In this document: one piece after another, positions 26,487 through 53,172 of the stretch
Layout of the letters: every line of letters begins with the position of its first letter
Numbering within the stretch: position 1 is the first letter of the stretch
Origin: Octopus bimaculoides
Lineage: Eukaryota
Direction of reading: 5' to 3'
Length of the DNA stretch: 64,000 bases
Assembly: GCF_001194135.2 (NCBI RefSeq)
Contig: NC_069004.1
Span: forward strand, 13,019,278 to 13,083,277
The notes under the pieces: model-generated
What the model was told of the DNA's origin: nothing
Databases searched by the model: none
What the model saw: the letters and a program-made list of their open reading frames with translations, nothing else
Position numbers and translations under genes: made by a program

Positions 26487-28056
26487 ATAAATATCTGTTT
26501 TCCATGCTGGCATGGGTTGAACGGTTTGAGAGGAGCCAGCCAGCTGAAGAACTGCCCAGGCTCTATTTGCCTGTTTTGGCTTGGTTCTTGGATGCCCTTC
26601 CTAATGCCAAACACTTCATTTCATGTTGCTCCAGTCCACTCTGCTCATTAAAATGAGTAATCCTGTGATGGACTGGCNNNNNNNNNNNNNNNNNNNNNNN
26701 NNNNNNNNNNGGGGGGGGGGGGTGAGGGAGGAGATATATGCACCAAAGAAACCAGGAAACTGGTCCTGAGTCTATATAACTTGGAAACGACCTTTATTAT
26801 TATTATTATTACTATTATTATTATTATCATTATGATATATATATATATATATATATACAATACATATGAGAAGGGATGACCACAAAGTGGACATCCTTTA
26901 TGCTAGAGATAGACCATCTACGGTCAAACCACTGGTTTTAAATTGGTATTAATTAAATTAATATCCAATTTATCACCCTTATTATCTAAATTTATATATA
27001 TATATATATATATATATAACGACTGCATCATCCTTTTGAAGTCCAATTTTCCATGTTTGCATAGGTTGGACAGAGTTTACTGAAGCAGATTTTCTATGGT
27101 TGGACATCCTACCTGTTATAAGCCCTCACCTATTCCCAAGCAAAGCAATATTTCCTCATGGCAAAGTATGTTCTTGCAGAATATCGGAAATGAATGACAC
27201 CAGTTTGTAAGACAGTGACAATCATTTACAACTATCATTTGATATCAAGACAAGGACACACACACACACACAAATATGGTGGGTTCAATTCAGTTTCTGT
27301 CAACCAAATTTACTCACAAGACTTTGGTTGGCAAGGACTATAGTAGAAGACACTTACCCAAGGTGCTATACAGTAGGACTGAACCCAACATCTCATGCCT
27401 GTACTTAATGTATATATCATATATATNNNNNNNNNNNNNNNNNNNNNNNNNNNNNNNATATATATATATATATATATAATATATAGGTGCAGGTGTGGCT
27501 GTGTGGTAAGAAGCTTCCTTTCCAACCACATGGTTCCGAGTTCAGACACACTGTGTGACACTTTGGGCATGTGTTTTCTCAGGCTGATTGATGCCTTGTA
27601 AGTGGATTTGACAGACTAGACAGAAACTGAAAAGAAGTCTATCGTGTGTATGTGTGTGTGTGTGTCCCACCACTGCTTGGCAACTAGTGATGGTGTGTTC
27701 ATGTCCCTGTAACATTAGCGGTTTGGGAAAAGAGACCAATAGAATAAAGTACAAGGCTTAAAAAAACAAAAGTACTAAGGGTGATTTATTTAGCTAAAAA
27801 CCTTTCAAGGCAGTGCCCCGGCATGGTCACAGTCTAATGACTGAAACAGGTAAAAAAATAAAAGATATACATATATAAAATGTCTTTTACTTTTCAACTG
27901 CTTCGACAGCAAGTCTGCAGAAAATGTTTGGGCATCATTGTCAGTGCAAGATACAGAAGTAATTACAGGTACTAAATGTATACACTAAGTTCTATGAGAT
28001 TGTCTGCAGTAGAATATTGAGCACTTGGGTGTCTTATACAATACAAGCAGACATAG

Positions 28057-29313
28057 CAGGCTGTTTGGGTTAAATTTGATGATTTTTTAAATGTCTCCTT
28101 TTTTTCTGGAACAGCTTGATACATTGGTGAGCAGTCAATGGTGTTGGGGGGGGCATGAGAAAAAGTTGGCTGATATGGAGGACTGGAAGCCATATGAATA
28201 TTGAAAAAGGTTTGCCTGTATCAAGATGATTCATGCTGGGTGTCTAAATGCTGACATCATTAAGGCTACTCCATGCTCGTGAACATTGTCAAGGCTGTAA
28301 AACATGACATGAACAGCTGCAATGAAGACTATGGAAACCATGGCCTGCAGGTAGGGATATAGCAGGGATTTTGACTCTGTGTCTTGCATGCCTGGATTCA
28401 TCCAACAACCACAGGATAAGGTGATGGAAGATCTGAGCAAGGGATTCTGGGCTTTGGTGAGGGAGATGAGTGCTGGAGTCGCTACCATGAAGATGGCCCT
28501 GAACGAGGACTTTTACTACCACTTGTACAAGAGGTACAAGGGAAAAATTCTGACGATCAAGATCAAGGAGACCCACTTGACAGATACAAAGAAGTTCCTG
28601 AACAAGCTGAGCCATCCTGTTGAGTCAGAGATGATCTAGTTCTTCTCAGATGAAAAGAACTTTTGTCTGGAACATTTGCACAACATCCAGAACAACAGGT
28701 GACGTACCAATCATGAAAACCAAGTTCCCCCAGACTGTGGTGGTCATTGGCTGTTTCCAGTGAGGATGATGCCATGCTACCCTACATCTTTGAACAGAGT
28801 CTAAGGCTCAATTCAGACAGCTACATGAAGCTACTGGAGACTGTGGTCAAACTCTGGCTGGTGAAGGTTGCTGCTGGAAAACCATATGTGTGGCAGCAGG
28901 ATTTGGTTCTTTGTCATACTGCCAGAAAGAGTGAGAAGTGGTTGCTAGAGTATTTCTATGACTTTGCCAGCCCCAATTTCTAACCACCTAATTCCTCCAT
29001 TTGTAATCCCATGAAATATTGTGTGGGACACCAATCCGCTCAGTCTGCAACACCAAGGCTGAGCTGGTGGCCAAGATCAAGGTGGTGTTTGAAGATCTTC
29101 CCAAGGGCACAGTGAGGAATGCATGTACTAGCTTCCAGAGCCGTCTTGAGGGCCATGGTTGAAGGTGAGGATGGCTACTTTGAGGAAACTTATTTCCCAG
29201 CCATAATCTAGTTGATATTTTTTGATTTCTTAAAAGTACTTTTATTTTTGGATGGAATATTGATTTTTTTCTTCCTTTTGTTCAACTGTCAAATTTAGCC
29301 CAAACATCCTCTG
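28057..29313 (+). mobile_element. Tc1/mariner superfamily (maT/DD37D-like) relic, copy 1
   Basis: Inverted termini (TGTTTGGG[T/C]TAAATTTGA). Fragments VSSEDDAMLPYIFE, PYVWQQD, F*PPNS..CNP; many stops. Confidence 0.8.
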
Positions 29314-29337
29314 TGTGTGTGTGTGTGTGTGTGTGTG

Positions 29338-29371
<34 letters not shown>

Positions 29372-29443
29372 TAGAGATCCACCCACACACATATACATGC
29401 TGTTGATGATTTCTTTTCCTTCTTTGGACATTTCCCTTTTTCC

Positions 29444-29477
29444 TTTCTGACGAAGATCTATGCTCAAAACGTCAAAA
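29444..29477 (+). ncRNA. Minimal (PLE-type) hammerhead ribozyme relic
   Basis: TTT-CTGACGA-A-GATC tat GCTC-AAAA-CGTC-AAA; a related relic lies on the minus strand at ~45896-45932. Core mutated. Confidence 0.45.
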
Positions 29478-30256
29478 ACTCTCTCTTTTTACCAAGCGTC
29501 AAACTATTACATTTCTTATGCTTGTCCTCTTGTTGTTTGTTATTGTTAATTTTATTGTTTGTTTATTTGATTTGACTACACACACATACACAGAGGCACC
29601 CATACATTATGTACCTACACATTTGTGTAATTAGAGGCTAAGACCATCAATTCTAAAAATACTTAGATGCTGACCATATATGGATGCGACCCTATATAAC
29701 ATCACATAGAATAAATGCCAAGATGAATGAAAAAGCATTGTTTATAGAAGGCTTTGTAAATGGGAATTATAACCTCAATATAAATTTGTGGGCATGTTTG
29801 CAAGTGTATGCAGGTCTGTATGTGTACATGGAAGTGCATGTCTATGCATGCACTTCTGTGGTCACACACATGTGTGATTTCTTTATGTGTACATAGTTCA
29901 ATGATTAAAAAATTTGTTTTTCAATCATGAAGTTTCAGGTTCAATACCACTGTGCAGCACAAGTTTCTACCAGGGCCTCAAGTCAACCCTAGTCTTGTGA
30001 ATAAGATGACTGGGTATAATGGAGACTGTATGTGTGAAACTTTGGTAAATGAACTGAATGGACTGGTAACTGAAAAGGGGTCAGTCATGCCACATGTCAT
30101 GCAACCCTGATCTTGTCTGAGGATTAAATTAACGGGACAAATGTATGTGGAATATTCAGCCACTAACACCATAATTCAGTGAATAAGTAGTTTCACTGAT
30201 AAAACAACTGGAATAACCCCATAGAAATCAATGGGAATCCATTTACTTATATTACA

Positions 30257-30325
<69 letters not shown>

Positions 30326-30711
30326 ACATATGAAAGAGTGAGTGAGTGTGTGTGTGTGTGCGCACACATGCACATGTAATTATATTTAAAAAAAAAACAG
30401 TTATTGGAAAATCTCAACCATACATGAAACTTCATAATGTAATCTGTCTTTTTCATTGAATTAAAAAAAAAAAAAATTATTCACAGCCATCATAGTTTAT
30501 CTTTTCTTTCCACTTTCTTTCTTGTTTCTCTCATTAACTCCTTCTCCCCACCCCTGACCACCACTCTCTCTTTTTCAGTCACTATACCACAAACATTACC
30601 TTCCTCTTTCTCAAACGATCTATTTTTACCTTGTTTCATTTGTGCATCACCATCATCATCATCATTGCTTTATTATTATTATTATTGTTGTTTTATGAAA
30701 AGAAAAAAAGT

Positions 30712-33700
30712 TTAAATGTTGGTGATTTGGGGATTTGAATTATGAAAGGAGTAGCTGGTTAAATTTAGATTATCCTTCCTACTACAGGATGTCGTGTTTA
30801 AACTGTCATCAGGTTCCTCCGTCAGAAAGAAGGAAGGTATCCGCTTGGAGTGGTCGTCACCGGTTTCTATGCCGTCAGCATTGTCATCAGCCTGAAAGAC
30901 AGAATTCTCACTAGACGTGTCCTCGTTAATTGCTAGCACATCAGCAGATGTGACGCTAGAAAGAGACCTGTGACTTGAGTGGCGAAAAAAATGCTCCAGT
31001 TCCTTGTCAATGCTGCTGGCCAAACTCAGTGATGGCGCCTTAAATGTAAGTTCACTTCCGGCAGTACTCACGCGATTGAATTGGGATGATGACGGAGAGG
31101 TTGATGATGACAAACACTCTGGAGATGAGCCACTACCAAGAAGGGCATCCTTTGACTGAAAGCCATTGTTTTGGTGGCACTTACTGCTGTTACTGTTGCT
31201 CCACTGAAGAGTTTTGGGAACTTTGGGAATTGAGACAGGTATTGGTGCTACAGCATGCATTCTTGGTACTCTTGGACTTTGACGCAACTCTTCCAGTTCT
31301 TCATCAGTACGGAAACGGACAAAACCATTTTGAACAATAAGCATTGAATCAGGCTCATCCAATGCTAAGTTTTCACCTTCTTGACTCAGAGAAATTGTTA
31401 ATGGAATTATTTCATAACCAGCAGCTTTGATTTCTTTGCGCCGTGTATCTTTTGAAATTCCAATGCTACTTATGTTTTCGTCCATGTTGGTCCAGCTGAT
31501 GTCTTTATGAGAATTCCACATGTTTTCCTTGCGACACAACCATGTGTAAGACGAACAGTAAAACCAAGGGTCGCAGCCATATTTGCTACGATGCTTAAAG
31601 GGAAGCGTGCTTATATAAGTAGTTATTATACAAAACAAGAATTCAAAGAAGCGAACAGCAGTTTGATAACCCCACCAGGGCCATGGTCTTGGAAGTTCAT
31701 TTGGGAAAATGCCCAAGAAGTACAGAGCTGAATATACTTGTAGACATGTACAAAATGTACCAATAATGGAACTAAAAAGAGCAACAGTTACACCAAGGCA
31801 GAGGGTGAGTCGTTCCTTGTATATTGTGTAGTTGTCCATGTGGATTTTGGCTTCACGGAGTTGAAGCAGGAGTTTTTGTCTTTTCTCAGCAGCAAAATGC
31901 AATTTTTTGTAAACATATATGTAACCCAAGAAAAGAAAAAGACCCCAGAGCACAAAGAAAATTTGGCAGACAAACAAAAAAGTTTTGACAGTAAGGAAGA
32001 GTCCGATGAGTATTGCAGCAGTGATGGGCAGGAGATAATGAACGACTATAATAGTAATTAATAAGGGCAAACACTGGAATTTGGATGACAAATAATAAAC
32101 TTTGGCAGTTTTAAGGAAGGCATAAAAGATTAATGCAAATGCTGATGTAAGGCAAGGAAATGCCAAGTAAAATAAGAGGAATCCTATGAGATAATGGTAT
32201 GTGTGGTCAGAGTTGTAACCATCAACCAGCAAGAAAAGAGCTCTTAGCAGACAAAATGTAAAGAGGAGCAGATTTACTGCAACAAAGTAATAGTTGTTTA
32301 GTAAGTGTATAGTATGTCGCAGTCGCAGTAAACAGATCAACAGATAAATGGCAAGAAGAGCAAACAGAGAACCAAAAGTATAAATGTGAACATGCCAAGC
32401 TGCTTTCCACTCCTGCTTGGCTACTTTCCAATCTGGGACAATTATGTAAGAGTTTTGAGGGCCCTTACTTTCTTTTACACTGACGTTTGTAGGAGAAGGG
32501 TCAGACGTTGAAGTAATCAGTGGCTTGAATATTGTTGCGATTGTTGTTGTAAAGGTATTGGATTTGGTTTCTAATGTGCTTTTAGTCCAGTCAGCAGTGG
32601 GTGAAGCTGTTGCCTTACTTTCAACAGAGGCCCCGTTTGTGCTGACAACAAACTTGTATTTAGAACTTGGAAATGTCTGACTGAAATTAGTTGAATTAGA
32701 ACCAGTATTTGGTGTTGGTTGCAGCAGTGTGTATAACTGACTGCTGGAAACTGTATTTGGGTGAAGAGTAAAAGATTTGTATAGACTGTTAGTGGGAGAA
32801 AGAGGAGATTTAGACATAACCGTAGTTTCTTCAATGACAGGTTTTGTCAGTGGTCTTGAATTATTGCTGGAAAGTGTTTTTGTTGTTGAATCAAGTTTGA
32901 GGGTCTTTGAGGATAAATTTGGATTGGGGACTGTGGTTGTCTGAACTGCCAAGGAACTCTGTTTGGTGTCTAAGGTAGCCAATAAAGAATTGTTCAACAG
33001 TAGAACAATGTTTGAAGTTGACAGAGATGCAGTGCGTAGCTGATTACTTAGAAGTGATACATTCTTCTTTGACCATCGATTTGACGAGGCATCAGTTGGG
33101 GTCAAGTAAAGGGAGTTTTCAATTTTGGGTTGAGTGTTGGTATCAGTTGAGTCATTCTTCAGTTGTAAGGTTATAAATGGCGTTGGCATTTTGGTCATAA
33201 GAGGCCCTTCGCTACCAGAATGCAAAAGATGTGAAGTCAATCCAATAGGTTCAAACTTGGAACTAGTTACAGGGTGAATATTTGTGGAAGTGGTGAATGT
33301 ATTTAATGGTAAGGAATTATAAATGGGAGTCACCATTGCCATTGAAGGTTTACTTTGAGAAGCTGATGATGTTGGTTGAACAAACAAAGAAGTTGAAGCT
33401 GTTTTGTGACTGGAAGACAAAAGAATAGCTTCTGATTTTGAAGCTGTGATGGAACTCTGGGGTAATGGAACTGATGAAGAAACAATCTTTGGCAATGAAG
33501 AGAAAGATGTTGGCTGGTGTGTTTTGTAAGGAATACTTTTAGTGTCAACATCTGTAATCATTGTAGTTTTAATAAAACTGGTGGCTGATGTTGGTGTTAT
33601 CTTATCAGGAGGATTATGGACGAAGGATGCAGCTGCAGTTGGCTTTATATTCTTAGATCGAGAATTATGGATTAACGAGGTGGCTGTTGTTGGCTTTATA

Positions 33701-34473
33701 ACCTTGGATCGTGGATTATAGATTAATGAAGCAGCTGCTGTTGGCTGTATAATCTTAGAACGGGGCTTACGAACATAAGAAGCAGCAGCTATTGTTGGTC
33801 TTGTAGTCTTACGCCGCCGATTACGGCCTGAGGAAGTAGCAGCTTCTGTTTGTTTTTTTGTCTTACGGCGTGGATTATGGCTGGAGGAAGCAGCAGTTTT
33901 TGTTGGTTTAGTAATTTTAAGAGTTGGGTTGGGGAGACTGTTGTTAGTGGATAGAGTATTGTTAGAGGAAACATTTTTTTCTTTAGCAGATTTCCTTTTT
34001 GCCCTCTTATTGGCTTGAGTTCGTAAACTGTTAGCAGACCGCTTAAAACGTCCCAAATGCAACTGCAGAGAATAACCATCAATTGGTTGTCGTGTGTTGG
34101 AAACTGTATCAAAGCAGTTATATTTTATGCTTCTGATTGGTAGATTTTTGGTAGAGAATAATTTGTAAAGGATGTTTCTATATCTACATTTTAATTCTGC
34201 AGCAGATGTTTGTGAGATTTTTAACTCTTGTTTTTTAAGCCGTCCAATTTTTCTGTTGGAGCCTAAAGGTGATATCTCTAAATTGGTCCGAGTTCTCTTG
34301 ACTGGAATATGCATTAAGCCATGAGACTGAATGAATGTCTTAGAGGCAGGGACATATTTTAATAATATTGTATCGTTGGAATAACCAGCAACTGTGGGTA
34401 TGTACAATAGTAAAGATTGTAATATGCAAGCAAGAATTAACCAGGAAAGAGATATCTGCAAAATAGTTTCCAT
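30712..34473 (-). CDS. PRRT3/PRRT4-like seven-transmembrane protein with long S/T-rich ectodomain (1253 aa, single coding exon)
   Basis: Uninterrupted ORF. The track start at 34506 is TTG; the first ATG (34473, METILQISLSWLILACILQSLLLYIPTVAG) begins a signal peptide, and an in-frame TAA lies upstream at 34533-34531. Seven hydrophobic segments at ~31610-32395 start with AW.VHIY.FGSLFALLA and include LRALFLLVD.Y, FPCLTSAF and PWPWWGYQTAVRFFE, as in the PRRT3/4 family. Confidence 0.85.
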   Translation of the reverse strand: METILQISLSWLILACILQSLLLYIPTVAGYSNDTILLKYVPASKTFIQSHGLMHIPVKRTRTNLEISPLGSNRKIGRLKKQELKISQTSAAELKCRYRNILYKLFSTKNLPIRSIKYNCFDTVSNTRQPIDGYSLQLHLGRFKRSANSLRTQANKRAKRKSAKEKNVSSNNTLSTNNSLPNPTLKITKPTKTAASSSHNPRRKTKKQTEAATSSGRNRRRKTTRPTIAAASYVRKPRSKIIQPTAAASLIYNPRSKVIKPTTATSLIHNSRSKNIKPTAAASFVHNPPDKITPTSATSFIKTTMITDVDTKSIPYKTHQPTSFSSLPKIVSSSVPLPQSSITASKSEAILLSSSHKTASTSLFVQPTSSASQSKPSMAMVTPIYNSLPLNTFTTSTNIHPVTSSKFEPIGLTSHLLHSGSEGPLMTKMPTPFITLQLKNDSTDTNTQPKIENSLYLTPTDASSNRWSKKNVSLLSNQLRTASLSTSNIVLLLNNSLLATLDTKQSSLAVQTTTVPNPNLSSKTLKLDSTTKTLSSNNSRPLTKPVIEETTVMSKSPLSPTNSLYKSFTLHPNTVSSSQLYTLLQPTPNTGSNSTNFSQTFPSSKYKFVVSTNGASVESKATASPTADWTKSTLETKSNTFTTTIATIFKPLITSTSDPSPTNVSVKESKGPQNSYIIVPDWKVAKQEWKAAWHVHIYTFGSLFALLAIYLLICLLRLRHTIHLLNNYYFVAVNLLLFTFCLLRALFLLVDGYNSDHTYHYLIGFLLFYLAFPCLTSAFALIFYAFLKTAKVYYLSSKFQCLPLLITIIVVHYLLPITAAILIGLFLTVKTFLFVCQIFFVLWGLFLFLGYIYVYKKLHFAAEKRQKLLLQLREAKIHMDNYTIYKERLTLCLGVTVALFSSIIGTFCTCLQVYSALYFLGIFPNELPRPWPWWGYQTAVRFFEFLFCIITTYISTLPFKHRSKYGCDPWFYCSSYTWLCRKENMWNSHKDISWTNMDENISSIGISKDTRRKEIKAAGYEIIPLTISLSQEGENLALDEPDSMLIVQNGFVRFRTDEELEELRQSPRVPRMHAVAPIPVSIPKVPKTLQWSNSNSSKCHQNNGFQSKDALLGSGSSPECLSSSTSPSSSQFNRVSTAGSELTFKAPSLSLASSIDKELEHFFRHSSHRSLSSVTSADVLAINEDTSSENSVFQADDNADGIETGDDHSKRIPSFFLTEEPDDSLNTTSCSRKDNLNLTSYSFHNSNPQITNI

Positions 34474-34807
34474 GTTGTCGCTTCTGTAGCGTACAACATG
34501 TGCCAATGTTATCGGTGAATGTCTTTCAAATTAGAAAACAACCTTTTTAATGCATAATGCCGGTATTCTGCCTCATATATCAATATACTGAGCATATTCT
34601 TCAGTGAGTGAGAATTGGGCAGTATAATTAAAAGAATACTGAAAGATTAGGAAACAACCGTGGCAAAGAAATCAGCATCCTCATGAAAATTCCTGATACA
34701 TAGAAAGATGGAATACTCCTGGTTGACAACTGTAATAGTCTTGAAGGTAGCGCTTATAAGAAATTGGTAGTTATGGATGTTGAACTGCTTCAGATAGTAA
34801 TAGATTT

Positions 34808-34832
34808 CTGAAGAAGAAAGAAAAAAAAAAAG
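34808..34832 (-). promoter_or_regulatory. 3' splice acceptor of the PRRT-like coding exon
   Basis: Minus strand reads TTTTTTTTTTTCTTTCTTCTTCAG|AAATC (AG at 34809-34808), giving ~334 nt of 5' UTR before the ATG; implies an upstream non-coding exon. Confidence 0.7.
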
Positions 34833-35134
34833 GAAAATTAATGAGCAAATAAAACAGAATTCAAGAATTCAAACAAATCAAACAAAGTAAAATTCTGATC
34901 TTTATTGGGAAAAAAAAGACAACAAAATAACAAAAAAAAGTGGCAGCATACATTTGTAAAAAAAAGACCTTATTAAACATAACTTAGATCAAGATTATTT
35001 TCAAAATCTGGGTACAGGTGCTGTGTTGGTTAAGAAATTTGCTTGGGTTCAATCCCACTGGGAAGTGTGTTTTTTAATATAACTCCAAGCTAATCAAAGC
35101 CTTGTGGGTGGATTTGCTAGACAGAAACTGAAAA

Positions 35135-35235
35135 ACAAACATCTGCTGCAGAATTAAAATGTAGATATAGAAACATCCTTTACAAATTATTCTCTACCAA
35201 AAATCTACCAATCAGAAGCATAAAATATAACTGCT
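35135..35235. repeat. Exact 101-bp inverted copy of PRRT-like coding sequence 34113-34213
   Basis: Base-by-base comparison: 35135-35235 equals the reverse complement of 34113-34213 at 101/101 positions. Confidence 0.95.
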
Positions 35236-35890
35236 ATGTACACTGCTATGTGTACATACAGAGTCTGCCAAAAAAATGTATACACAGGAAGCTTGCTTCC
35301 CAGCCACATGATTTCAGGTTCAGGCCCACTGCATGGCACCTTGGGCATGTGCTTTCTGCTATAGCTTCAGGCTGACAGAAGCCTGGTGATTGAATTTGGT
35401 GGGCAGAAGTTACTGTCATGTGCGCACATGTGTGTGTAAGTGTTTGTACCTCCTAACTTCAGGAAAGGAAAAATCTGTATAAATATTTAACATGTATAAG
35501 TACCTCTTTCGATGTTTTATCAAATTGTGATAACACTGAATAAAAATATACAGATTTCTTCCTTTCCTTAAGTGTGTATACATTTGTTTTGGTGGACTCT
35601 GTAAATATGTGTATATATAATATATGTTCATGCCTGTGTTTGTGTGTGCCCTTGTCTAGAAACAAATGAGGTTGTTTTGTTACTTGTCTTCTGTGAAAAA
35701 CAAGTGTAGCCATGGGAAAATATGACCTTGCTTGGAAACAGGTGAGGGTTTGTGACAGGAAGGGCATCCAGCCATAAAAAAATCTACCTCATATTCCAGC
35801 ATGGAAAAGTGGACATTAAAATGATGATGGATAATGTTACATATACATTCATATTTATTCATATATACATGTTCATATGTATATATATAT

Positions 35891-36717
35891 AATACAAAGA
35901 ATATATATGCATGTATACACACATATATGTACATACTTACATCTACATGTGTATATAGATGCATATCAGGGTACAGGATGTTAGAACAATGAACTACAGA
36001 CAACGGAATGAACACATAGGAAAATAGATAGCCACTTCGAATAATTCCTTCGTCAGCTGCCTCTATTCTAACTAGATGTTTCAAAGATAAGGCAGAACAT
36101 ACTCTAGAATAGTCTCTTCCTGAGTAGTGGATTGACCTACTAAACAGAGGACTCCAAGGTGGCAAACACAAACCAAGACAGGAAAAATTGGACAGTGAAA
36201 ACAACATTAAAATGCCGTATGGCCAAACGTGAATCTGATGTAGAACGCTAACAGTTCGTCTCGCCTTCATAGTGGCTGGAGTGAAAAGAGAGTTGACCAC
36301 AGGTCACGCGTGAGCAGAGAGGATGGTAGAGGGAGGAAGTGGAATGAGGAGGAAGAGAGAGATGTGTGTGTAGCAGTGAAGTAGAAGCCAGGACAACAGA
36401 AGGAAGCGGAGCGAGAGGGGGAGATGAATAAGAAGAAAGATAGTTAGATAGATAGAGGGATAGATAGAAAGATAGAGGAAGACAGACAGATAGATAGATA
36501 GATAGATAGATAGAAAGAAAGATAGAGTCACGTCAGAATAATAAAGTACAAACTTGCAAAAAGGACGTGTGCGTTCAATGATGTAATAATACAAAGAATA
36601 TATATGCATGTATACACACATATATGTACATACATCTACATGTGTATATAGATGCATATCAGGGTACAGGACGTTAGAACAATGAACTACAGACAACGGA
36701 ATGAATACATAGGAAAA
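35891..36717. mobile_element. Putative Penelope-like remnant bounded by ~130-bp direct repeats
   Basis: 35891-36024 and 36588-36717 are near-identical direct repeats. The minus strand carries a CTGACGA..TTCGAA hammerhead-like remnant at ~36037-36057. PLE assignment is inference. Confidence 0.5.
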
Positions 36718-36985
36718 CACAGACGCACAAACCAACATATACATATATATATGTATATACAATGAGCTTCTTTTCAGTTTCCGTCTATCAACGCCACTCA
36801 CAAGGCTTTGGTCGGCCCAAGGCTATAGTAGAAGACACTTGCCCAAGGTGCCACACAGTGGGACTGAACCCAGAACCATGTGGTTGGTAAGCAAGCTACT
36901 TAACTCACAGCCACTCCTGCACACACACACACACACACGTGTGTGTGTGTGTATATGTGTGTGTGTGTATATATGTGTGTGTGTG

Positions 36986-37864
36986 TTCTGATCAATAAGT
37001 ATCCGGACTGTTGCCATAGTAGCAAAGGAAAAGCACGCAGAGTGAAGTCGCTTGGCACAGATTGACCTTGATCTCTGCTGTATATGCACACTAAGCTTCA
37101 TCATTCTACTTCACTTCCACTGTTTACAGCAGTACTTGGAAGGAAGGTGTGTAGCCTGTGATCGTCACATTGACCATGACAGAGAAAGTTGAGCAGAGAA
37201 TCTGCAACAAATTTTGCCAAAAGCTTGGTGATACCTGCTCAGTGGCCTATGCAAAGTTTTTATCATTCTTGACACAATCAAGGAGATCCTGTGCAACAGA
37301 AACCAGAGTATCTTTTTGGTCAGCTGAAAGCAGTTTTGACACAAACTTAGCAGACATGTGTCTCACCTAAATCTTTAATGGTAATGGACTGAACTGAACC
37401 ATAAATAATCTGCACACCCTCTGATAACTAACAGATGGTGATGCAAAGATTTCCCCTCACAGCTGCACATGCATCTGTGATGTTTTTCTCAGTTCTGCTG
37501 GTTGTGGGTCTCCCAGAACGTTCATCAATATCGACATTTTTGCAGCCATCTTGGAAATGTGTGAACCACTTGTACACTTGTGTGTGGCTCATACACTCCT
37601 CTCCCTACACTTTCTGCAACCTTGCATACGACTCTGAGCAGGTATCACCATGACGACTTTCTCTATCATGATCAATGCGATGATCACACGCTACACACCT
37701 TTCTTCCAAGCACTGCAGTAAAAAGCGGAAGTGAGTTAGAACATTAAAACTTAGTGCACATGCACAGCAGAAGTTGAGGTCAATCTTTACCAAGTGGCTT
37801 CACTCTGCATTCTTTAGCTTCGTTACTATGGCAACAGTCCGGATACTTAATGATCAGACGTCGT
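36986..37864. mobile_element. Non-autonomous mariner made of two 5' ends in inverted orientation
   Basis: TIRs CTGATCA[A/T]TAAGTATCCGGACTGTTGCCATAGT at both ends. The plus arm encodes MTEKVEQRICNKFCQKLGDTC; the minus arm encodes the same N-terminal region (GDTCSESYARLQKV..QVYKWF..DERSGRPTTS). Confidence 0.8.
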
Positions 37865-37879
37865 ATGGATATGTATATG

Positions 37880-38039
37880 CATAGTAGCTTGCTTACCAGC
37901 CACATGGCTCCGGGTTCAGTCCCACTGCGTGACACCTTGGGCAAGTGTCTTCTACTATAGACTTGGGCCGACCAAAGCCTTGTGAGCGGATTTGGTAGAC
38001 GGAAACTGAAAGAAGTCCGTTGTATATATGTATATATAC

Positions 38040-38071
<32 letters not shown>

Positions 38072-38280
38072 TAGTGTGTCTGTGTTTGTCCCCCCACCAT
38101 TGCTTGACAACCGATGCTGGTGTGTTTACATCCCCGTAACTTAGTGGTTTGGCTAAAGAAACAGATACAATAAGTACTAGGCTTGCAAAGAATAAGTCCT
38201 GGGGTCGATTTGCTCGACTAAAGGCGGTGCTCCAGCATGGCCACAGTCAAATGACTGAAACAAGTAAAAGAGTAAAAGAT
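37880..38280 (+). mobile_element. Abundant bipartite SINE, near full length
   Basis: GGTTCAGTCCCACTGCG..GGGCAAGTGTCTTCTACTATAG..GGATTTGGTAGACGGAAACTGAAAGAAG, (CA/TA)n spacer, tail ending GACTGAAACAAGTAAAAG. About 20 partial copies occur on both strands (e.g. ~950, 6715, 17625, 25360, 27290, 27490, 35020, 35290, 36765, 38695, 50090, 53500, 59545, 60190, 61435, 63270). Confidence 0.85.
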
Positions 38281-39010
38281 TATATATATATACAAATATA
38301 TATCTGGTGGAAATCAATTCACGACTGAGTAAGGTTACTTCCTAAAGTCAGTAAGTTTGTGCAAACATTCCAAGAGATGAGTGATGGAGAGATGAGTGAT
38401 GGAGAGATGATTGATAGAGAGATGAATGATGGAGGGGTGGGTGGTGGAGGAGGTGAGTGATGGAGGGGAGAATGATGCAAGGATGAACGATAAGGAAAGA
38501 AATGAAATGATATGAATATATTGCTTTTCAAGAAATTTGGTTTACAATAAGAAAGAAGCTATTTGTTCAATCTATGGCTCATTGTGGGCCAGATATTTTT
38601 CAACGCTTTAATACTAACCAGCTTCACACTGCCACTGGTTTTGTGATACAAAACTTGCTTGAAAAATGTTTATTTTTGAACAAAACAAAAAAAGAAACTT
38701 GCTTCCCAAACACATGGCTCCAGGTTCAGTCCCACTGCATGGTGCCTTGTGCAAGTGTCTTCTACTATAGCCTCAGGCTGATCAAGGCCCTGTGAGTGGA
38801 TTTGGTAGATGGAAACTGAAAGCAGCCCATCATGTATATATATATATATATATAAATATCATTACAGATATAGGGTAAAGGATTATTAATTTATTAATAA
38901 ATTAATAATTAATAAATTAATAATTAATAATTTTTACCAAGTAGTTTGGTATGTAAAAAACCATTATCGGTAAAGAACTTATATAAAAAAGTTCTTTTAA
39001 AATTATAAAC

Positions 39011-39223
39011 ATAATTAAGGGATCAGCAACAGTTGCTTCACCACATACCGAAATTTAGAAATAGCAGTTAAAGTGCTAATTCTACTACTAAAATAAGTCT
39101 CCAAAAGATAGCAATACTATTGCTATCTGTTGGAGACTTATTGTAGTAGTAGAATTAGTACTTTAACTGCTATTTCTAAATTTCGGTATGTGGTGAAGCA
39201 ACTGTTGCTGATCCCTTAATTAT
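39011..39223. repeat. 213-bp near-perfect palindrome
   Basis: 106-bp arms, 1-nt centre (39117), 3 mismatches. Confidence 0.95.
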
Positions 39224-40274
39224 ATATATATATATATATATATCTATGCAAATGTGTCTTAGTGCTTGTTCCCCACCACCATCACCTGCACTTGACAATC
39301 AGTGCTGGTGTGTTTATATCTCCATAACTTAATAGTTCAGCAAAAGAGACTGATAGAATAAGTACTAGGGTTTAAAAAAAAGGGTCCTGGGGTTGATTTG
39401 TTCGAGTAAAACCCTTCAAAGCAGAGCCCCAGCATGGCTGCAGCCAAATAACTGAAACAAGTGAAAGATAAACAACAAAAGATCATAATTTTAGGTAAGA
39501 ACTCATTAAGTTACGTTCCCAAAACCAGCTTAATAATGAGGAAGTTGGTTAATTCACTAAATATTTTCTAAATCCTTGATTACTTACAAAATTATTTGCA
39601 ATACATAAGAGAGAATATTCCATTAGAAAAATGGTGATGGAAAGTTTAAAGATACAGGATAGATATGATGGTGGAGTTCCTAAGTTTGTAAGTCAGTCAT
39701 GTGTAGCTTTAAGATTTTTAGTTCGTTTAGCAATTGGACATTGCAGTAGAGTTGTGCATCTTTTATTTTTTATCTTTTACTTATTTCAGTCAATGGACTG
39801 CAGCCATGCTGGAGCATTGCCTTGAAGAATTTTAATTGAACTTGTTGACCACCCCCAGTAGTTATTATTATTAGTAATGGGCTTTCAGTTTCTGTCTACC
39901 AAATTCACTCACAAGGCTTTCGTCAGCCTGAGGCTATAGTAGAAGACACAGTGAGATTGAACCTGAAACCATGTAGTTGGGAAGGAAACTTAGATAGCCA
40001 AGATGGATTTTTATGTTTGTTTGTTTTTTTGTCATGAGAAAGGTACCCTTAAACAAGAGATCTGGCCTACATGCTTTCAACAGAGCAGATTCCACAAAAG
40101 CCACCCAAGGATCAAGTGGTGGTGTTAGACTGGGCAACAGATTAAATTTACCACCAAATAGGCTGAAGTGGGATTTGAACTTAGAATGCAAAAATCTAGA
40201 ATGTATTACTGCAAGGCAACCTGTTTGATGCTCAAATGACTCTGCCAGTTCATTCTACACAAGTAATTTATGTA

Positions 40275-41496
40275 CTGGGTATTTGGGGTACATTTGATGA
40301 TTTGTTATGTCTCCATTTTTCTGAAATACCTTGAAGTATTGGTAAATAGTCAATGGTGTTGGAGAGCATAAGGATTAAAGTTGTAGTTGAGAAAAAGTTA
40401 GCTGATATGGAAAACTGGAAGCCATTTGAATACTGGAAAAGAGTTATCTGTATCAAGATGATTTGTGCCAGGTATCAAAATACAAACACCATGACTGCTG
40501 CTCTAAGCTCTGTGAATACCGTAAAGGCTGTAAGACATGACATGAACAGCTGCAATGGAGACTATGGAACTGTAGCTAGCAGGAAGGGACACAGCAGGTG
40601 ATCTGACTGGGTCCAAACACTTGGATTCATCCGAAATTGCAGGACAAGTGGATGGAAGATCCAAGCAATGGAATCCATTGCTTGGCAAGAGAGACGATTA
40701 TTGAAGTCACCATGATGAAGCTAGTCCTGAATGACAACCAAGGCCAAGGAAACTCGCTTGACAAACGCAAAGAAGCTGAGGCGTCCTGTTGAGCTGAGGA
40801 TAATCTGTTTCTTCTCAGATGAAAAGAACTTCTGCCTAGACTAGATGAGCATTGCTCAGAACAACAATCCATGTGGTATTTCAATTATTATAAAAACTAA
40901 GTCCTCCCAAATTGTGATGGTTTTTGGGTGCCTCTCCAGTGAAGGTGACGTCATGCTACCCTACATCTTTGAAGAGAGCCTAAGGCTCAATTGAGACGGC
41001 TATGTGAAGCTACTGGAGACTGTGGTCAAACCCTGGCTGCAGTGCATTTGAACTGAAAGGCCATATGTGTGGCAGCAGGATTTGGCTCCATGCCATACTG
41101 CTGGAAAGAGCCAGAAATAGTTTTTGGAGGATTTCTACAACTTCACCCGCCCCAATTTCTGGCCTTCTAATTCCTCCAATTGTAATCCTATGGATTGCTA
41201 TGCATGGGGCATAGTAATTATTCTGCCTGCAACGCCAAGGCTGAGTTGGAGGCCAAGATCAAAAAGGTGTTTATAGATCTTCCCAGGGACACAGGGAAGG
41301 ATGCATGTGCCAGATTCAGGAGTCATTTTAAAGCCATTGTGGAATCTGAGGGTGGCTACTTTGAGTAAACCGTTATCTCCCAGCCATAATCTAGTTGATA
41401 TATTTTAATTTTTAAAAATACTTTTATTTTTGGATGGCATATTGTGTTTTCCTTTCATTTTATGCAAACTGTCAAATTTAACCTGAACACTTTCTG
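40275..41496 (+). mobile_element. Tc1/mariner superfamily (maT/DD37D-like) relic, copy 2
   Basis: Colinear with 28057-29313 (shared TTCTTCTCAGATGAAAAGAACTT, GTGTGGCAGCAGGATTTGG, CCCAGCCATAATCTAGTTGATAT). Confidence 0.8.
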
Positions 41497-42350
41497 TTGA
41501 ATCTGGAAGTAAACAAGCAAAGTCATTCAGGGTGAGATTTGAACATGAAATGCTAAAATTTGAAATAAATACTGCAAGTCATTTTGCCGGATGCCCTAAC
41601 GATGCTACCAATGTCAAATAACCTTTATATTTTGAGTGCAGTTTATCTTTTAATCCATCCAAGGTTGATAAAATAAGTAAGTTCATCCATTATCATGGGT
41701 ATAGCTTAGAGTTAGAAGGGTTCTCTCAAGCTTACTCTCTCTAGACACACACAGACACACACACAAAATACATTTCAAATGGTGATCCCACAAGCCAAGA
41801 GAACATAGGGCAAATATTGCTACAACCACAACATTGCCCAATGCATTACATACAGGACAATCTCCAATGTAATATAGAACATTAACCCCAGACTAAATCC
41901 TAACAAATAGAATACAGGCCCTCCATTAACAACCACCATTATAGTAACTACACACCAAAACACTGTTTAATATTGTTATCACTATGTAACATTTTGTACT
42001 AATCTATAGCTTGAAATGTTTTACTTTTATGCTTGGTGATGGTGGTAGGAGTGGTGCCTTTTTCTTCTTCTCTGTCTTTATCCTTTCTTTCTTCTTTGAA
42101 TGAGAAGGTTGTTTGTCCATTCGGTCAGGATGGAGTAGACAGCTTTATCTAATTTTACTGAGAGGAAATGTTTTTCACCCATAAACCATCATGCGTACAT
42201 ATGCTGAGAAATCAATTAAGAAATAATTCTAACACACCACTCTTTCATGTGTGAGAGGGAAGAAGAAAAAAAAAGATTATATAAAAGACATTACCCTTCA
42301 AAAACATTAAAAGACAAGTTGTGTGTTGCACTTGTTGCAAACATAAAGAA

Positions 42351-42385
<35 letters not shown>

Positions 42386-42431
42386 AGACTGAACTTCATG
42401 TTCATACATGTTTACCTTTTTTCCTTGTCCT

Positions 42432-43432
42432 ATATACATACATACATATACATACATATAAATACATATATATATGCATACATATACATATATATATAAA
42501 TATACATACATATATATATACATATACATATATATAAATATACATACATATATATATACATATACATATATATAAATATACATACATATATATACATATA
42601 TATACATACATATATACATACATATATATATACATACATATATACATACATATATATATATACATACATATATATATATACATACATATATACATACATA
42701 TATATATATACATACATATATACATACATATATATATATATATATACATACATATATACATACATATATATATATATACATACATATATACATACATATA
42801 TATATACATACATATATACATACATATATATATATATACATACATATATACATACATATATATANNNNNNNNNNNNNNNNNNNNNNNNNNNNNNNNNNNN
42901 NNNNNNNNNNNNNNNNNNNNNNNNNNNNNNNNNNNNNNNNNNNNNNNNNNNNNNNNNNNNNNNNNNNNNNNNNNNNNNNNNNNNNNNNNNNNNNNNNNNN
43001 NNNNNNNNNNNNNNNNNNNNNNNNNNNNNNNNNNNNNNNNNNNNNNNNNNNNNNNNNNNNNNNNNNNNNNNNNNNNNNNNNNNNNNNNNNNNNNNNNNNN
43101 NNNNNNNNNNNNNNNNNNNNNNNNNNNNNNNNNNNNNNNNNNNNNNNNNNNNNNNNNNNNNNNNNNNNNNNNNNNNNNNNNNNNNNNNNNNNNNNNNNNN
43201 NNNNNNNNNNNNNNNNNNNNNNNNNNNNNNNNNNNNNNNNNNNNNNNNNNNNNNNNNNNNNNNNNNNNNNNNNNNNNNNNNNNNNNNNNNNNNNNNNNNN
43301 NNNNNNNNNNNNNNNNNNNNNNNNNNNNNNNNNNNNNNNNNNNNNNNNNNNNNNNNNNNNNNNNNNNNNNNNNNNNNNNNTACATACATATATATATATA
43401 TACATACATATATATATATATACATACATATA

Positions 43433-43503
<71 letters not shown>

Positions 43504-43790
43504 ATACATACATATATATATATACATACATATATACATACATACATATATATATATATATATCTACATACATACATATATATATATACACATATATATA
43601 TATACATACATATATACATATACATATATATACACATACATATACACACATATATACACATACACACATATATACATATACACACATATATACATATACA
43701 CACATATATACATATACACACATATACGTATATACATATACATATATATATACATATATGCATATATACGTATATGTATGCCCAGAGCAT
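42432..43790. repeat. Compound (TA)n/(TACA)n microsatellite spanning an assembly gap
   Basis: Direct inspection; source of the long spurious Y/I/C/V/M ORFs. Confidence 0.95.
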
Positions 43791-52898: not shown

Positions 52899-53160
52899 AA
52901 ACAATTGCAGCATGGAAGGTGTTTATAAGCCATTTAAGAAACACACAAAAACTGTTAAATTCACTTCAACATTTAAATTTAATTTGCCAAAATATTTTCG
53001 TCGCTTTGAGACCGCAACCTGTTCTTTTGTCAGTGAACAGGTCAGGGTCTCAAAGCAACGAAAATAGTTTGGCAAATTAAATTTAAATGTTGAAGTGAAT
53101 CTAACAGTTTTTGTATGTTTCTTAAATGGTTTATAAACACCTCCCATGCTGCAACTGTTT
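52899..53160. repeat. Inverted repeat, 115-bp arms, 32-bp spacer
   Basis: 52899-53013 vs 53046-53160, 7 mismatches; the right arm runs into an N-gap. Confidence 0.9.
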
Positions 53161-53172
53161 ANNNNNNNNNNG

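What the first reader, a model, noticed from the sequence alone, without database searches (positions are those of the whole stretch)
34113..35235. Perfect intronic antisense copy of coding sequence: candidate editing-complementary duplex in the PRRT-like pre-mRNA
Seen: 35135-35235 is a 101/101 reverse complement of CDS 34113-34213 (codons QTSAAELKCRYRNILYKLFSTKNLPIRSIKYNC). It lies in the intron upstream of the acceptor at 34808, appended to a visibly decayed SINE, and is followed by a small CTGCTATGT reiteration. In the minus-strand pre-mRNA it could form a 101-bp helix looping out 921 nt that contain the 3' splice site and start codon. Established: ADARs edit exons paired with intronic complementary sequences, and coleoid cephalopods recode extensively. 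Inference: a templated insertion (polymerase-theta-like) created a de novo editing or splicing control element over an A-rich, Lys/Asn/Ile/Tyr-rich, two-Cys pro-region. Perfect identity means either a recent origin or active maintenance.
Basis: partly seen in the sequence, partly recalled or inferred. Interest (0 to 1): 0.8.

Follow-up and report, generated by a model that had tools for sequence, protein, structure and literature searches.

The report
Young backwards exon copy in intron
A 101-base piece of an octopus gene's coding exon has been copied backwards into the intron just upstream, most likely by a recent DNA copying slip, so the unspliced RNA could fold on itself, but nothing yet shows that the animal uses this.

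Summary
Window 34113-34213 and 35135-35235 are a 101/101 perfect reverse complement, 921 nt apart, and no third copy exists. The window is Octopus bimaculoides (GCA_001194135.2). The source arm encodes residues 87-121 of a 1253-aa PRRT3-domain protein on the minus strand. The copy lies about 330 nt upstream of a 3' splice site, which a transcript from a related octopod confirms. It sits at the body/tail boundary of an old, decayed SINE.

The copy carries two substitutions that arose only in the O. bimaculoides exon, so it was made in that lineage. Perfect identity needs only recency, not maintenance. O. sinensis and O. vulgaris lack the copy, but their target site is also missing, so no empty-site allele is available.

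The junctions show 6-nt and 1-nt microhomology, a 12-14-nt reiteration, and a mismatch plus a slip at the tract's end. This points to replication or repair template switching. Classical polymerase-theta insertion is a poorer fit, because the tract is too long, too distant from its template and too accurate.

A 101-bp RNA helix (-165.7 kcal/mol) is predicted. Editing, silencing and splicing effects are all untested. An assembly artefact is not excluded, since this is a short-read assembly and 101 nt is a common read length. Verdict: a probably real, probably neutral young structural variant, of moderate interest.

The parts
34113..34213 (-). Exonic source arm: CDS nt 261-361, residues 87-121 of the PRRT3-domain protein. 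The RNA is A-rich, with 45 A in 101 nt.
   Evidence: The sequence is present in the exon of O. sinensis, O. vulgaris and two further octopods, so the exon is the source.
35135..35235 (-). Intronic inverted copy. It reads mRNA-sense on the + strand, so it is antisense to the CDS within the minus-strand pre-mRNA.
   Evidence: 101/101 reverse complement. It shares two O. bimaculoides-derived exon substitutions.
35236..35242 (-). Probable continuation of the copied tract: ATG-TACA against exon TTGATACA at 34105-34112, with one mismatch and one 1-nt slip. The copy reads TAT where the outgroup exons read CAT/CAC and the present exon reads TTT.
   Evidence: The chance of such an extension is about 0.013. 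Suggestive, not proven.
35230..35255 (.). Junction B: tandem reiteration ACTGCTATGTAC / ACTGCTATGTGTAC. The first ACTGCT is the end of the copy, giving 6-nt microhomology.
35010..35134 (+). Old decayed SINE (SINE1). Its body ends ...GGAAACTGAAA at consensus position 152, and the copy starts 2 nt later, at the body/tail boundary (junction A, microhomology of 1 nt or less).
   Evidence: Its 5' part is orthologous in O. sinensis and O. vulgaris.
34214..35134 (-). The 921-nt loop between the arms. It holds the polypyrimidine tract and the 3' splice site (AG at 34809-34808), the 5' UTR part of the coding exon, and the ATG (34473-34471).
30712..34807 (-). Large coding exon of the PRRT3-domain gene. 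The ORF runs 34473-30712 and encodes 1253 aa.
   Evidence: PF25987 PRRT3, precomputed; O. vulgaris UniRef name 'Proline-rich transmembrane protein 3/4 domain-containing protein'.
35288..35420 (+). Second, 5'-truncated and diverged SINE (SINE2), nested in an older imperfect local foldback (35257-35286 / 35573-35603 and 35456-35481 / 35547-35573).

Best explanation
This is a young structural mutation specific to the O. bimaculoides lineage. During replication or break repair in the upstream intron, a growing DNA strand left its template inside the simple-sequence tail of an old SINE. It stuttered locally, which produced the 12-14-nt reiteration. It then annealed through the 6-nt microhomology AGCAGT/ACTGCT to the same-strand or sister copy of the coding exon about 1 kb away. 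It copied about 101-109 nt in reverse orientation and returned with 1 nt or less of homology. This is a switch-and-return template switch of the four-point / serial-slippage / FoSTeS-MMBIR kind.

Shown: the inverted perfect copy, the junction anatomy, the lineage-specific derived bases in the copy, and the predicted helix.

Inferred: the enzymology, and everything about RNA consequences. The most likely present status is a neutral or nearly neutral variant. If the intron is transcribed with the exon, its intronic arm pairs with codons 87-121 in the pre-mRNA. That would make an incidental long perfect dsRNA that ADAR would deaminate promiscuously. It is not an evolved control element.
For: - Perfect 101-nt inverted copy, unique in the window.
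- The exon is the source, because the sequence sits in the exon of four other octopods.
- The copy shares the O. bimaculoides-only changes GAG>GAA and CTGCC>CTGCT, so it postdates the split from O. sinensis/O. vulgaris. That split is put at 13-34 My in PMC10925132.
- Zero differences are compatible with any age up to about 0.5-0.7 of that time.
- Junction B has 6-nt microhomology plus a 12-14-nt tandem reiteration. Junction A has 1 nt or less.
- The tract ends with a mismatch and a 1-nt slip. This is the pattern reported where templated synthesis aborts (PMC5068794).
- The neighbourhood holds other local rearrangements: a 136-nt direct duplication and an older foldback.
- Template switching is a documented source of new perfect inverted repeats and RNA hairpins (PMC5453318; PMC10710096 and PMC8794818, listed).
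- The MFE and centroid folds of the 1231-nt pre-mRNA stretch both contain the whole helix, and the duplex energy is -165.7 kcal/mol.
- The SINE next to the copy is old and shared with the outgroups, so the copy was not made together with it.
Against: - No read-level or second-assembly confirmation could be obtained. The only record with this protein is the same short-read, gap-rich assembly.
- 101 nt equals a common Illumina read length (own knowledge). The project's read length could not be checked.
- No empty-site allele exists. O. sinensis and O. vulgaris both lack the 3' part of SINE1 that forms the target.
- A tract of about 100 nt copied from about 1 kb away is longer-range than the short template switches described in PMC5453318.
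- Co-transcription of intron and exon rests on a transcript from another species (L003). Its 5' exon was not found in the window.
Confidence: 0.68

Rival explanations
1. Assembly artefact. The inverted 101-mer was introduced during contig building or gap closure of the Illumina-based assembly, for instance from a fold-back chimeric read or a misplaced read, and is not in the animal's genome.
For: - The window has 12 N-runs, which is typical of a scaffolded short-read assembly.
- A later paper calls this assembly gap-rich and fragmented (PMC10925132).
- The perfect tract is exactly 101 nt, a common read length (own knowledge).
- It sits where a SINE's TA/TG tail is expected, a sequence class that often breaks assemblies here.
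- The small tandem reiteration at junction B could be an unmerged overlap from gap patching.
- No independent assembly or read evidence could be retrieved.
Against: - The feature lies 7.7 kb from the nearer N-run, inside the gap-free stretch 27458-42864.
- K-mer or overlap-based closure needs reads that cross both junctions. That means two independent chimeric junctions, each with 6 nt of homology or less.
- Homology probably continues 8 nt beyond the 101 with a mismatch and an indel. The tract is then not read-sized, and at that position it differs from the present exon while matching the inferred earlier state.
- No other perfect inverted duplicate occurs in 64 kb.
Confidence: 0.12
2. The copy is a functional editing-complementary sequence or splicing/expression control element, kept identical by selection or gene conversion. 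It directs ADAR recoding of residues 87-121 or regulates use of the 3' splice site.
For: - The duplex is predicted to dominate the fold.
- The exon arm has 45 A, of which 29 would recode if edited.
- Coleoids edit heavily, and ECS-type intron-exon pairing is an established mechanism (PMC5705066; PMC9068888).
Against: - The copy is absent from every other species examined. No conservation or compensatory change can be shown.
- Perfect identity is explained by youth alone.
- The arm is not more conserved than the rest of the N-terminal region.
- Known selective ECS duplexes are short and imperfect. A perfect 101-bp helix predicts non-selective hyper-editing (own knowledge).
- In squid, editing is enriched in coding sequence and 3' UTR over introns relative to editable adenosines, and most ubiquitous low-level sites are likely by-products (PMC9068888).
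- No RNA data exist for this locus.
Confidence: 0.06
3. RNA-templated origin. A broken DNA end in the intron was extended on the gene's own nascent transcript or mRNA by a reverse transcriptase activity (LINE RT or Pol theta), rather than on DNA.
For: - The copy is mRNA-sense on the + strand and lies between two + strand SINEs.
- The transcript of the same gene would be physically close by.
- The source lies wholly within one exon, so a DNA template and an RNA template cannot be told apart from the sequence.
Against: - Both SINEs are old: SINE1 is shared with the outgroups and SINE2 is about 78% identical to other copies. The copy is 100% identical, so it was not made in either SINE's retrotransposition.
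- There is no poly(A), no target-site duplication and no splice junction.
- RNA-templated repair is rare in normal cells (own knowledge).
Confidence: 0.07
4. Same origin, different consequence. The hairpin is processed by Dicer into endogenous siRNAs antisense to the host mRNA, as at an hpRNA-like locus, which would give self-silencing rather than editing.
For: A long perfect intramolecular dsRNA is predicted. Inverted duplication of target-gene fragments is how Drosophila hpRNAs and young plant MIR genes arise (own knowledge).
Against: No small-RNA data are available. The intronic arm is removed with the intron. ADAR editing of the duplex would antagonise dicing. The endo-siRNA pathway is poorly characterised in cephalopods (own knowledge).
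Confidence: 0.05

Closest known systems
Template-switch mutations (Ripley quasipalindrome model; four-point model of Loytynoja and Goldman, PMC5453318; de novo RNA hairpins and miRNAs from template switching, PMC8794818 and PMC10710096)
   Same: A nearby stretch is copied in reverse complement in one event and creates a perfect inverted repeat that can fold as an RNA hairpin. It is lineage-specific and flanked by small irregularities.
   Different: The described events are mostly tens of bases with arms close together. Here the tract is 101-109 nt and the template is 921 nt away, which is nearer to the FoSTeS/MMBIR scale. The ancestral empty site could not be recovered.
Polymerase-theta templated insertions (TMEJ 'delins', snap-back synthesis; PMC5068794, PMC4912351)
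   Same: Microhomology-primed junctions, a reverse-complement insert as in snap-back synthesis, reiterated priming that gives a small duplicate at the junction, and a mismatch and slip where synthesis stopped.
   Different: The insert is about 4-10 times longer than typical. The template is about 1 kb away rather than within about 10-20 bp. The first 101 nt are error-free despite the reported rate of about 1 error per 30 bp.
Intronic editing-complementary sequences (GRIA2 Q/R site ECS; Drosophila Syt1 ECS; PMC5705066)
   Same: An intronic sequence complementary to an exon of the same pre-mRNA, which must pair before splicing.
   Different: Known ECSs are conserved, imperfect and usually short, and they direct site-selective editing. 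This one is perfect, long, present in one species and has no editing evidence. It lies upstream of the exon and encloses the 3' splice site.
Inverted Alu/SINE pairs in pre-mRNAs
   Same: An intramolecular long dsRNA in a transcript, expected to be promiscuously edited. Such pairs at 82-96% are frequent in this very window.
   Different: One arm here is protein-coding sequence, so any editing would recode the protein. The arms are 100% identical.
hpRNA loci and young plant MIR genes born by inverted duplication of their target gene
   Same: An inverted duplicate of a gene fragment gives a perfect hairpin that is antisense to that gene.
   Different: Those are separate transcription units acting in trans. 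Here the duplicate is in cis, inside the target's own intron. No small RNAs are known from it.

Membership tests
Template-switch (switch-and-return) mutation | The inserted tract is the reverse complement of nearby sequence on the same chromosome | tested here: met
   101/101 match, 921 nt away, and the only copy in the window.
Template-switch (switch-and-return) mutation | Derived state: absent from the ancestor or sister lineages, with an intact empty site | tested here: inconclusive
   The copy is absent from O. sinensis, O. vulgaris and the L002 species. However, the target site is itself missing in the first two. The derived status rests on two O. bimaculoides-specific exon substitutions shared by the copy.
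Template-switch (switch-and-return) mutation | Short range, within one replication fork | tested here: inconclusive
   The 921-nt distance and 101-109-nt tract are larger than the short events modelled in PMC5453318. They are compatible with FoSTeS/MMBIR-scale switching (own knowledge).
Polymerase-theta templated insertion | Junction microhomology and reiterated priming | tested here: met
   6 nt (ACTGCT) at junction B with a 12-14-nt reiteration, and 1 nt or less at junction A.
Polymerase-theta templated insertion | Small insert (mostly under 25 bp) templated within about 10-20 bp of the break | tested here: not met
   The insert is 101-109 nt and its template is 921 nt away, against the published distributions.
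Polymerase-theta templated insertion | Error-prone synthesis | tested here: inconclusive
   0 errors in 101 nt, then a mismatch and a 1-nt slip in the last 8 nt.
ADAR editing-complementary sequence | Intronic sequence base-pairs with the exon in the pre-mRNA | tested here: met
   Predicted only. The MFE and centroid structures both hold the full helix, and the duplex energy is -165.7 kcal/mol.
ADAR editing-complementary sequence | Intron and exon are co-transcribed | tested here: inconclusive
   The acceptor at 34808 is confirmed by a spliced transcript of another octopod. The 5' exon was not located in the window, and there are no O. bimaculoides RNA data.
ADAR editing-complementary sequence | A-to-I editing of the paired exon segment | not testable with these tools
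   No RNA-seq or editing tables were reachable.
ADAR editing-complementary sequence | Evolutionary conservation or compensatory change of the pairing | tested here: not met
   The copy is present in one species only, and the arm is not a conservation peak.
SINE/LINE retrotransposition chimera (RT template jump) | The co-inserted parts have the same age | tested here: not met
   SINE1 is shared with the outgroups and heavily decayed. SINE2 is about 78-80% identical to other copies. The copy is 100% identical to the exon.
hpRNA / endo-siRNA hairpin | Small RNAs of 20-23 nt from both arms | not testable with these tools
   No small-RNA data. No Rfam family matches 30000-40000.

The most novel reading that the evidence does not exclude
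The copy is real and fixed in O. bimaculoides, and it acts as a newborn editing-complementary sequence. It would turn 29 recodable adenosines of a conserved, Cys-containing N-terminal segment of a PRRT3-like membrane protein into a species-specific hyper-edited patch. O. sinensis and O. vulgaris, which lack the copy, would serve as natural controls. That would be a dated example of how one template-switch mutation creates a cluster of recoding sites in a coleoid.
Probability: 0.13. Interest if true: 0.65.

Novelty: new member of a known kind. Interest (0 to 1): 0.33.

Why it matters
If it is real, this is a clean and datable case of a single template-switch mutation placing a perfect antisense copy of coding sequence into the same gene's intron. 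That is raw material for an ADAR substrate, an siRNA hairpin or a splicing-modulating helix. Coleoid editing sites number in the hundreds of thousands, and how their double-stranded structures arise is poorly documented. A one-species newborn duplex with close relatives that lack it would allow a direct before/after comparison. If it is an artefact, it is a useful warning about exact read-length inverted duplicates in this widely used reference assembly. As it stands there is no sign of selection or function, so it is of moderate interest.

Tried and rejected
1. Independent confirmation. I looked up the window protein and two flanking ORFs (206 aa and 102 aa) among public contigs. Only the same assembly carries the protein, and the ORFs are not on record. 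No Logan contigs of O. bimaculoides cover the locus.
2. Read length and assembly methods. The 2015 genome paper and the 2017 editing paper are not held. The 2022 paper gives no genomic read length for the octopus.
3. Empty-site test in O. sinensis and O. vulgaris. The orthologous target is deleted or replaced in both, so the test is uninformative.
4. SINE-retrotransposition chimera. Rejected on the age mismatch.
5. A repeated mobile element that carries the copy. Rejected, because the arm and its right-hand flank are unique in the window and in the outgroup loci.
6. Source arm as a special conserved RNA element. Rejected, because its nucleotide, amino-acid and third-position conservation is average for the N-terminal region.
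7. Known RNA family. No Rfam hit in 30000-40000.
8. The Pfam scan of the protein in the local library found nothing. The PRRT3 assignment therefore rests on the precomputed PF25987 hits and source names.
9. Other exon-derived fragments in the window. None were found. The only other hits are the TA microsatellite of the 3' UTR.
Full report
**What is there**

The sequence at 34113-34213 is the exact reverse complement of 35135-35235: 101 of 101 bases, with 921 nt between the arms. A window of this size and composition would be expected to hold about 1e-49 such pairs by chance. No 12-mer of the arm occurs anywhere else in the window. A search of the whole exon against the window finds no other copied fragment, only TA-microsatellite hits of the 3' UTR. 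The other long inverted repeats in the window are SINE pairs and foldback elements at 82-96% identity, or microsatellites. This is the only perfect one.

**Where it is**

The window comes from Octopus bimaculoides assembly GCA_001194135.2, chromosome CM046624.1. The minus strand carries a 1253-aa ORF (34473-30712) in one large exon. Its orthologues are O. sinensis LOC115224017 (94% identity) and an O. vulgaris protein that UniRef names a 'Proline-rich transmembrane protein 3/4 domain-containing protein'. Both have a precomputed PF25987 (PRRT3) hit. The local Pfam copy gave no hit.

The exon arm encodes residues 87-121, QTSAAELKCRYRNILYKLFSTKNLPIRSIKYNC. A Logan contig from a more distant octopod (L003) is a spliced transcript. 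It aligns to the window up to 34808 and then continues into an unrelated 5' exon. The copy is therefore intronic, about 330 nt upstream of the acceptor. The 921-nt spacer holds the acceptor and the ATG. The 5' exon itself was not found in the window.

**The flanks**

A consensus built from 11 SINE copies in the window aligns to 35010-35134 from consensus position 0 to 152, ending GGAAACTGAAA. The copy begins two bases later, at the boundary between the SINE body and its TA/TG tail. On the other side the copy ends ...ATATAACTGCT and is followed by ATGTAC ACTGCTATGTGTAC. This is a 12-14-nt tandem reiteration whose first ACTGCT belongs to the copy.

Gapped alignment carries the homology eight bases further (34105-34213 against 35135-35242, 107/109), with one mismatch and one 1-nt gap. 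In simulation such an extension arises by chance about 1.3% of the time. A second, 5'-truncated and diverged SINE follows at 35288-35420, nested in an older imperfect local foldback.

**Direction and age**

The 101-nt sequence sits in the coding exon of O. sinensis, O. vulgaris and the two Logan species. The exon is therefore the source. None of those loci has an inverted copy within 10 kb.

This absence is weaker evidence than it looks. Both O. sinensis and O. vulgaris share a breakpoint (...GTATATGTT|TGGAGTTATAG) at which the 3' part of SINE1 is missing, and that part is the target site. About 3.2 kb of the window (35089-38295) corresponds to a single SINE in them. No empty-site allele exists.

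The dating rests on the alignment of the arms. The O. bimaculoides exon has two changes not seen in any other species, GAG>GAA and CTGCC>CTGCT, and the intronic copy has both. The copy was therefore made in the O. bimaculoides lineage after those changes.

Just beyond the perfect tract, the outgroup exons read CAT or CAC (His) and the present exon reads TTT (Phe). The copy reads TAT, a possible fossil of the intermediate state. If that is right, the exon has changed once since the event, and the copy cannot have come from a read of today's exon.

[quoted passage not shown] With those rates, zero differences in 101 nt stays within 95% limits for ages up to about 0.5-0.7 of the split, with a median near 0.12-0.16. 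PMC10925132 cites 13-34 My for the split. Recency is enough, and 'active maintenance' need not be invoked.

**How it was made**

This part is inference. The anatomy is that of a switch-and-return template switch:
- the copy is inverted;
- the template is nearby;
- entry used 6 nt of microhomology and exit used 1 nt or less;
- there is a local stutter at the entry side;
- the tract ends with a mismatch and a slip.

Read on the minus strand, a nascent end ...CATAGCAGT first slipped back 12-14 nt. It then paired through AGCAGT with the exon, was extended to 34213, and returned next to the SINE body.

Template switching of this kind is documented as a source of new perfect inverted repeats and RNA hairpins (PMC5453318; PMC8794818 and PMC10710096).

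However, published Pol theta inserts are mostly under 25 bp, about 85% are primed within 10 bp of the break, and they carry about one error per 30 bp (PMC5068794). A run of 101 error-free bases copied from 921 nt away fits a more processive, replication-type switch better.

An RNA-templated event cannot be excluded, because the source lies within one exon. A SINE retrotransposition chimera can be excluded, because the neighbouring SINEs are far older than the copy.

**Could it be an artefact?**

The assembly is short-read based and has 12 N-runs in this window. A later paper describes it as gap-rich. The perfect tract equals a common Illumina read length (own knowledge), and the project's read length could not be checked. 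The site is one where a microsatellite tail is expected.

Against an artefact:
- The feature lies 7.7 kb from the nearer gap.
- Closing a gap through it would need two independent chimeric junctions.
- The homology probably runs past 101 nt, with a difference from the present exon.
- No similar perfect duplicate occurs elsewhere in 64 kb.

I could not obtain any independent assembly or read evidence. I put the artefact at roughly one in eight.

**What it may do**

Folding the 1231-nt minus-strand stretch gives an MFE structure and a centroid structure that both contain the entire 101-bp helix. The isolated duplex has an energy of -165.7 kcal/mol. The exon arm has 45 adenosines, and 29 of them would change the amino acid if read as G.

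If the intron is transcribed with the exon and the helix forms before splicing, ADAR would be expected to deaminate many adenosines in both arms non-selectively. This rests on established behaviour of long perfect dsRNA (own knowledge), against the background of heavy coleoid editing (PMC9068888; PMC5705066). Dicer processing or slowed use of the enclosed 3' splice site are alternatives.

None of this is shown. There are no RNA data for the locus. The copy is not conserved. The arm is no more conserved than its surroundings. No Rfam family matches. The default reading is a neutral or slightly deleterious young variant with at most incidental editing.

**Verdict**

It is a new instance of a known kind of mutation, the template-switch inverted duplication that creates an RNA hairpin. 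What makes it notable is that one arm is coding sequence of the host gene.

The decisive checks are simple. Look for the two junctions in the existing HiFi assembly and reads. Then compare RNA with DNA in O. bimaculoides and in its relatives that lack the copy.

Noticed in passing
window 39004-39230: Near-perfect palindrome with 113-nt arms at 96% and a 1-nt spacer. It is bounded by TTAA on both sides and its ends read GGGATC...GATCCC. It has no SINE similarity and looks like a piggyBac-type foldback MITE.
   Followed up: partly
window 52899-53160: Palindrome with 126-nt arms at 92% and a 10-nt spacer. It ends one base before the N-run 53162-53171. It is either a foldback element or an assembly effect at a gap edge.
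   Followed up: partly
window 35089-38295 vs L001 9218-9432 and L005: About 3.2 kb of the O. bimaculoides intron corresponds to roughly 215 bp (one SINE) in O. sinensis and O. vulgaris. Both share the same breakpoint, which removes the 3' part of SINE1. This stretch of intron is structurally very unstable.
   Followed up: partly
window 35889-36024 and 36586-36717: A 136-nt direct duplication at 95.6% identity, about 700 bp apart, inside the O. bimaculoides-specific segment.
   Followed up: no
window 35257-35603: Nested imperfect inverted repeats (35257-35286 / 35573-35603 and 35456-35481 / 35547-35573) bracket SINE2. They are not repeated elsewhere in the window or in the outgroup loci. This is an older local foldback right next to the young copy.
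   Followed up: partly
window 34110-34112 (exon) vs 35236-35238 (copy): The codon is His (CAT/CAC) in the outgroups and Phe (TTT) in O. bimaculoides. The intronic copy reads TAT there, a possible preserved intermediate of a two-step codon change.
   Followed up: partly
window 33600-33752 and 33861-33911: 51-nt tandem units inside the CDS at 63-73% identity. They encode about 17-aa repeats (KPTAAAS..HNPRSK-like) in the Ser/Thr/Pro-rich extracellular region of the protein.
   Followed up: no
window 42430-43660, flanking N-run 42865-43380: A long TA-rich microsatellite array on both sides of an assembly gap. It is similar to the TA tract in the gene's 3' UTR (30237-30360).
   Followed up: no
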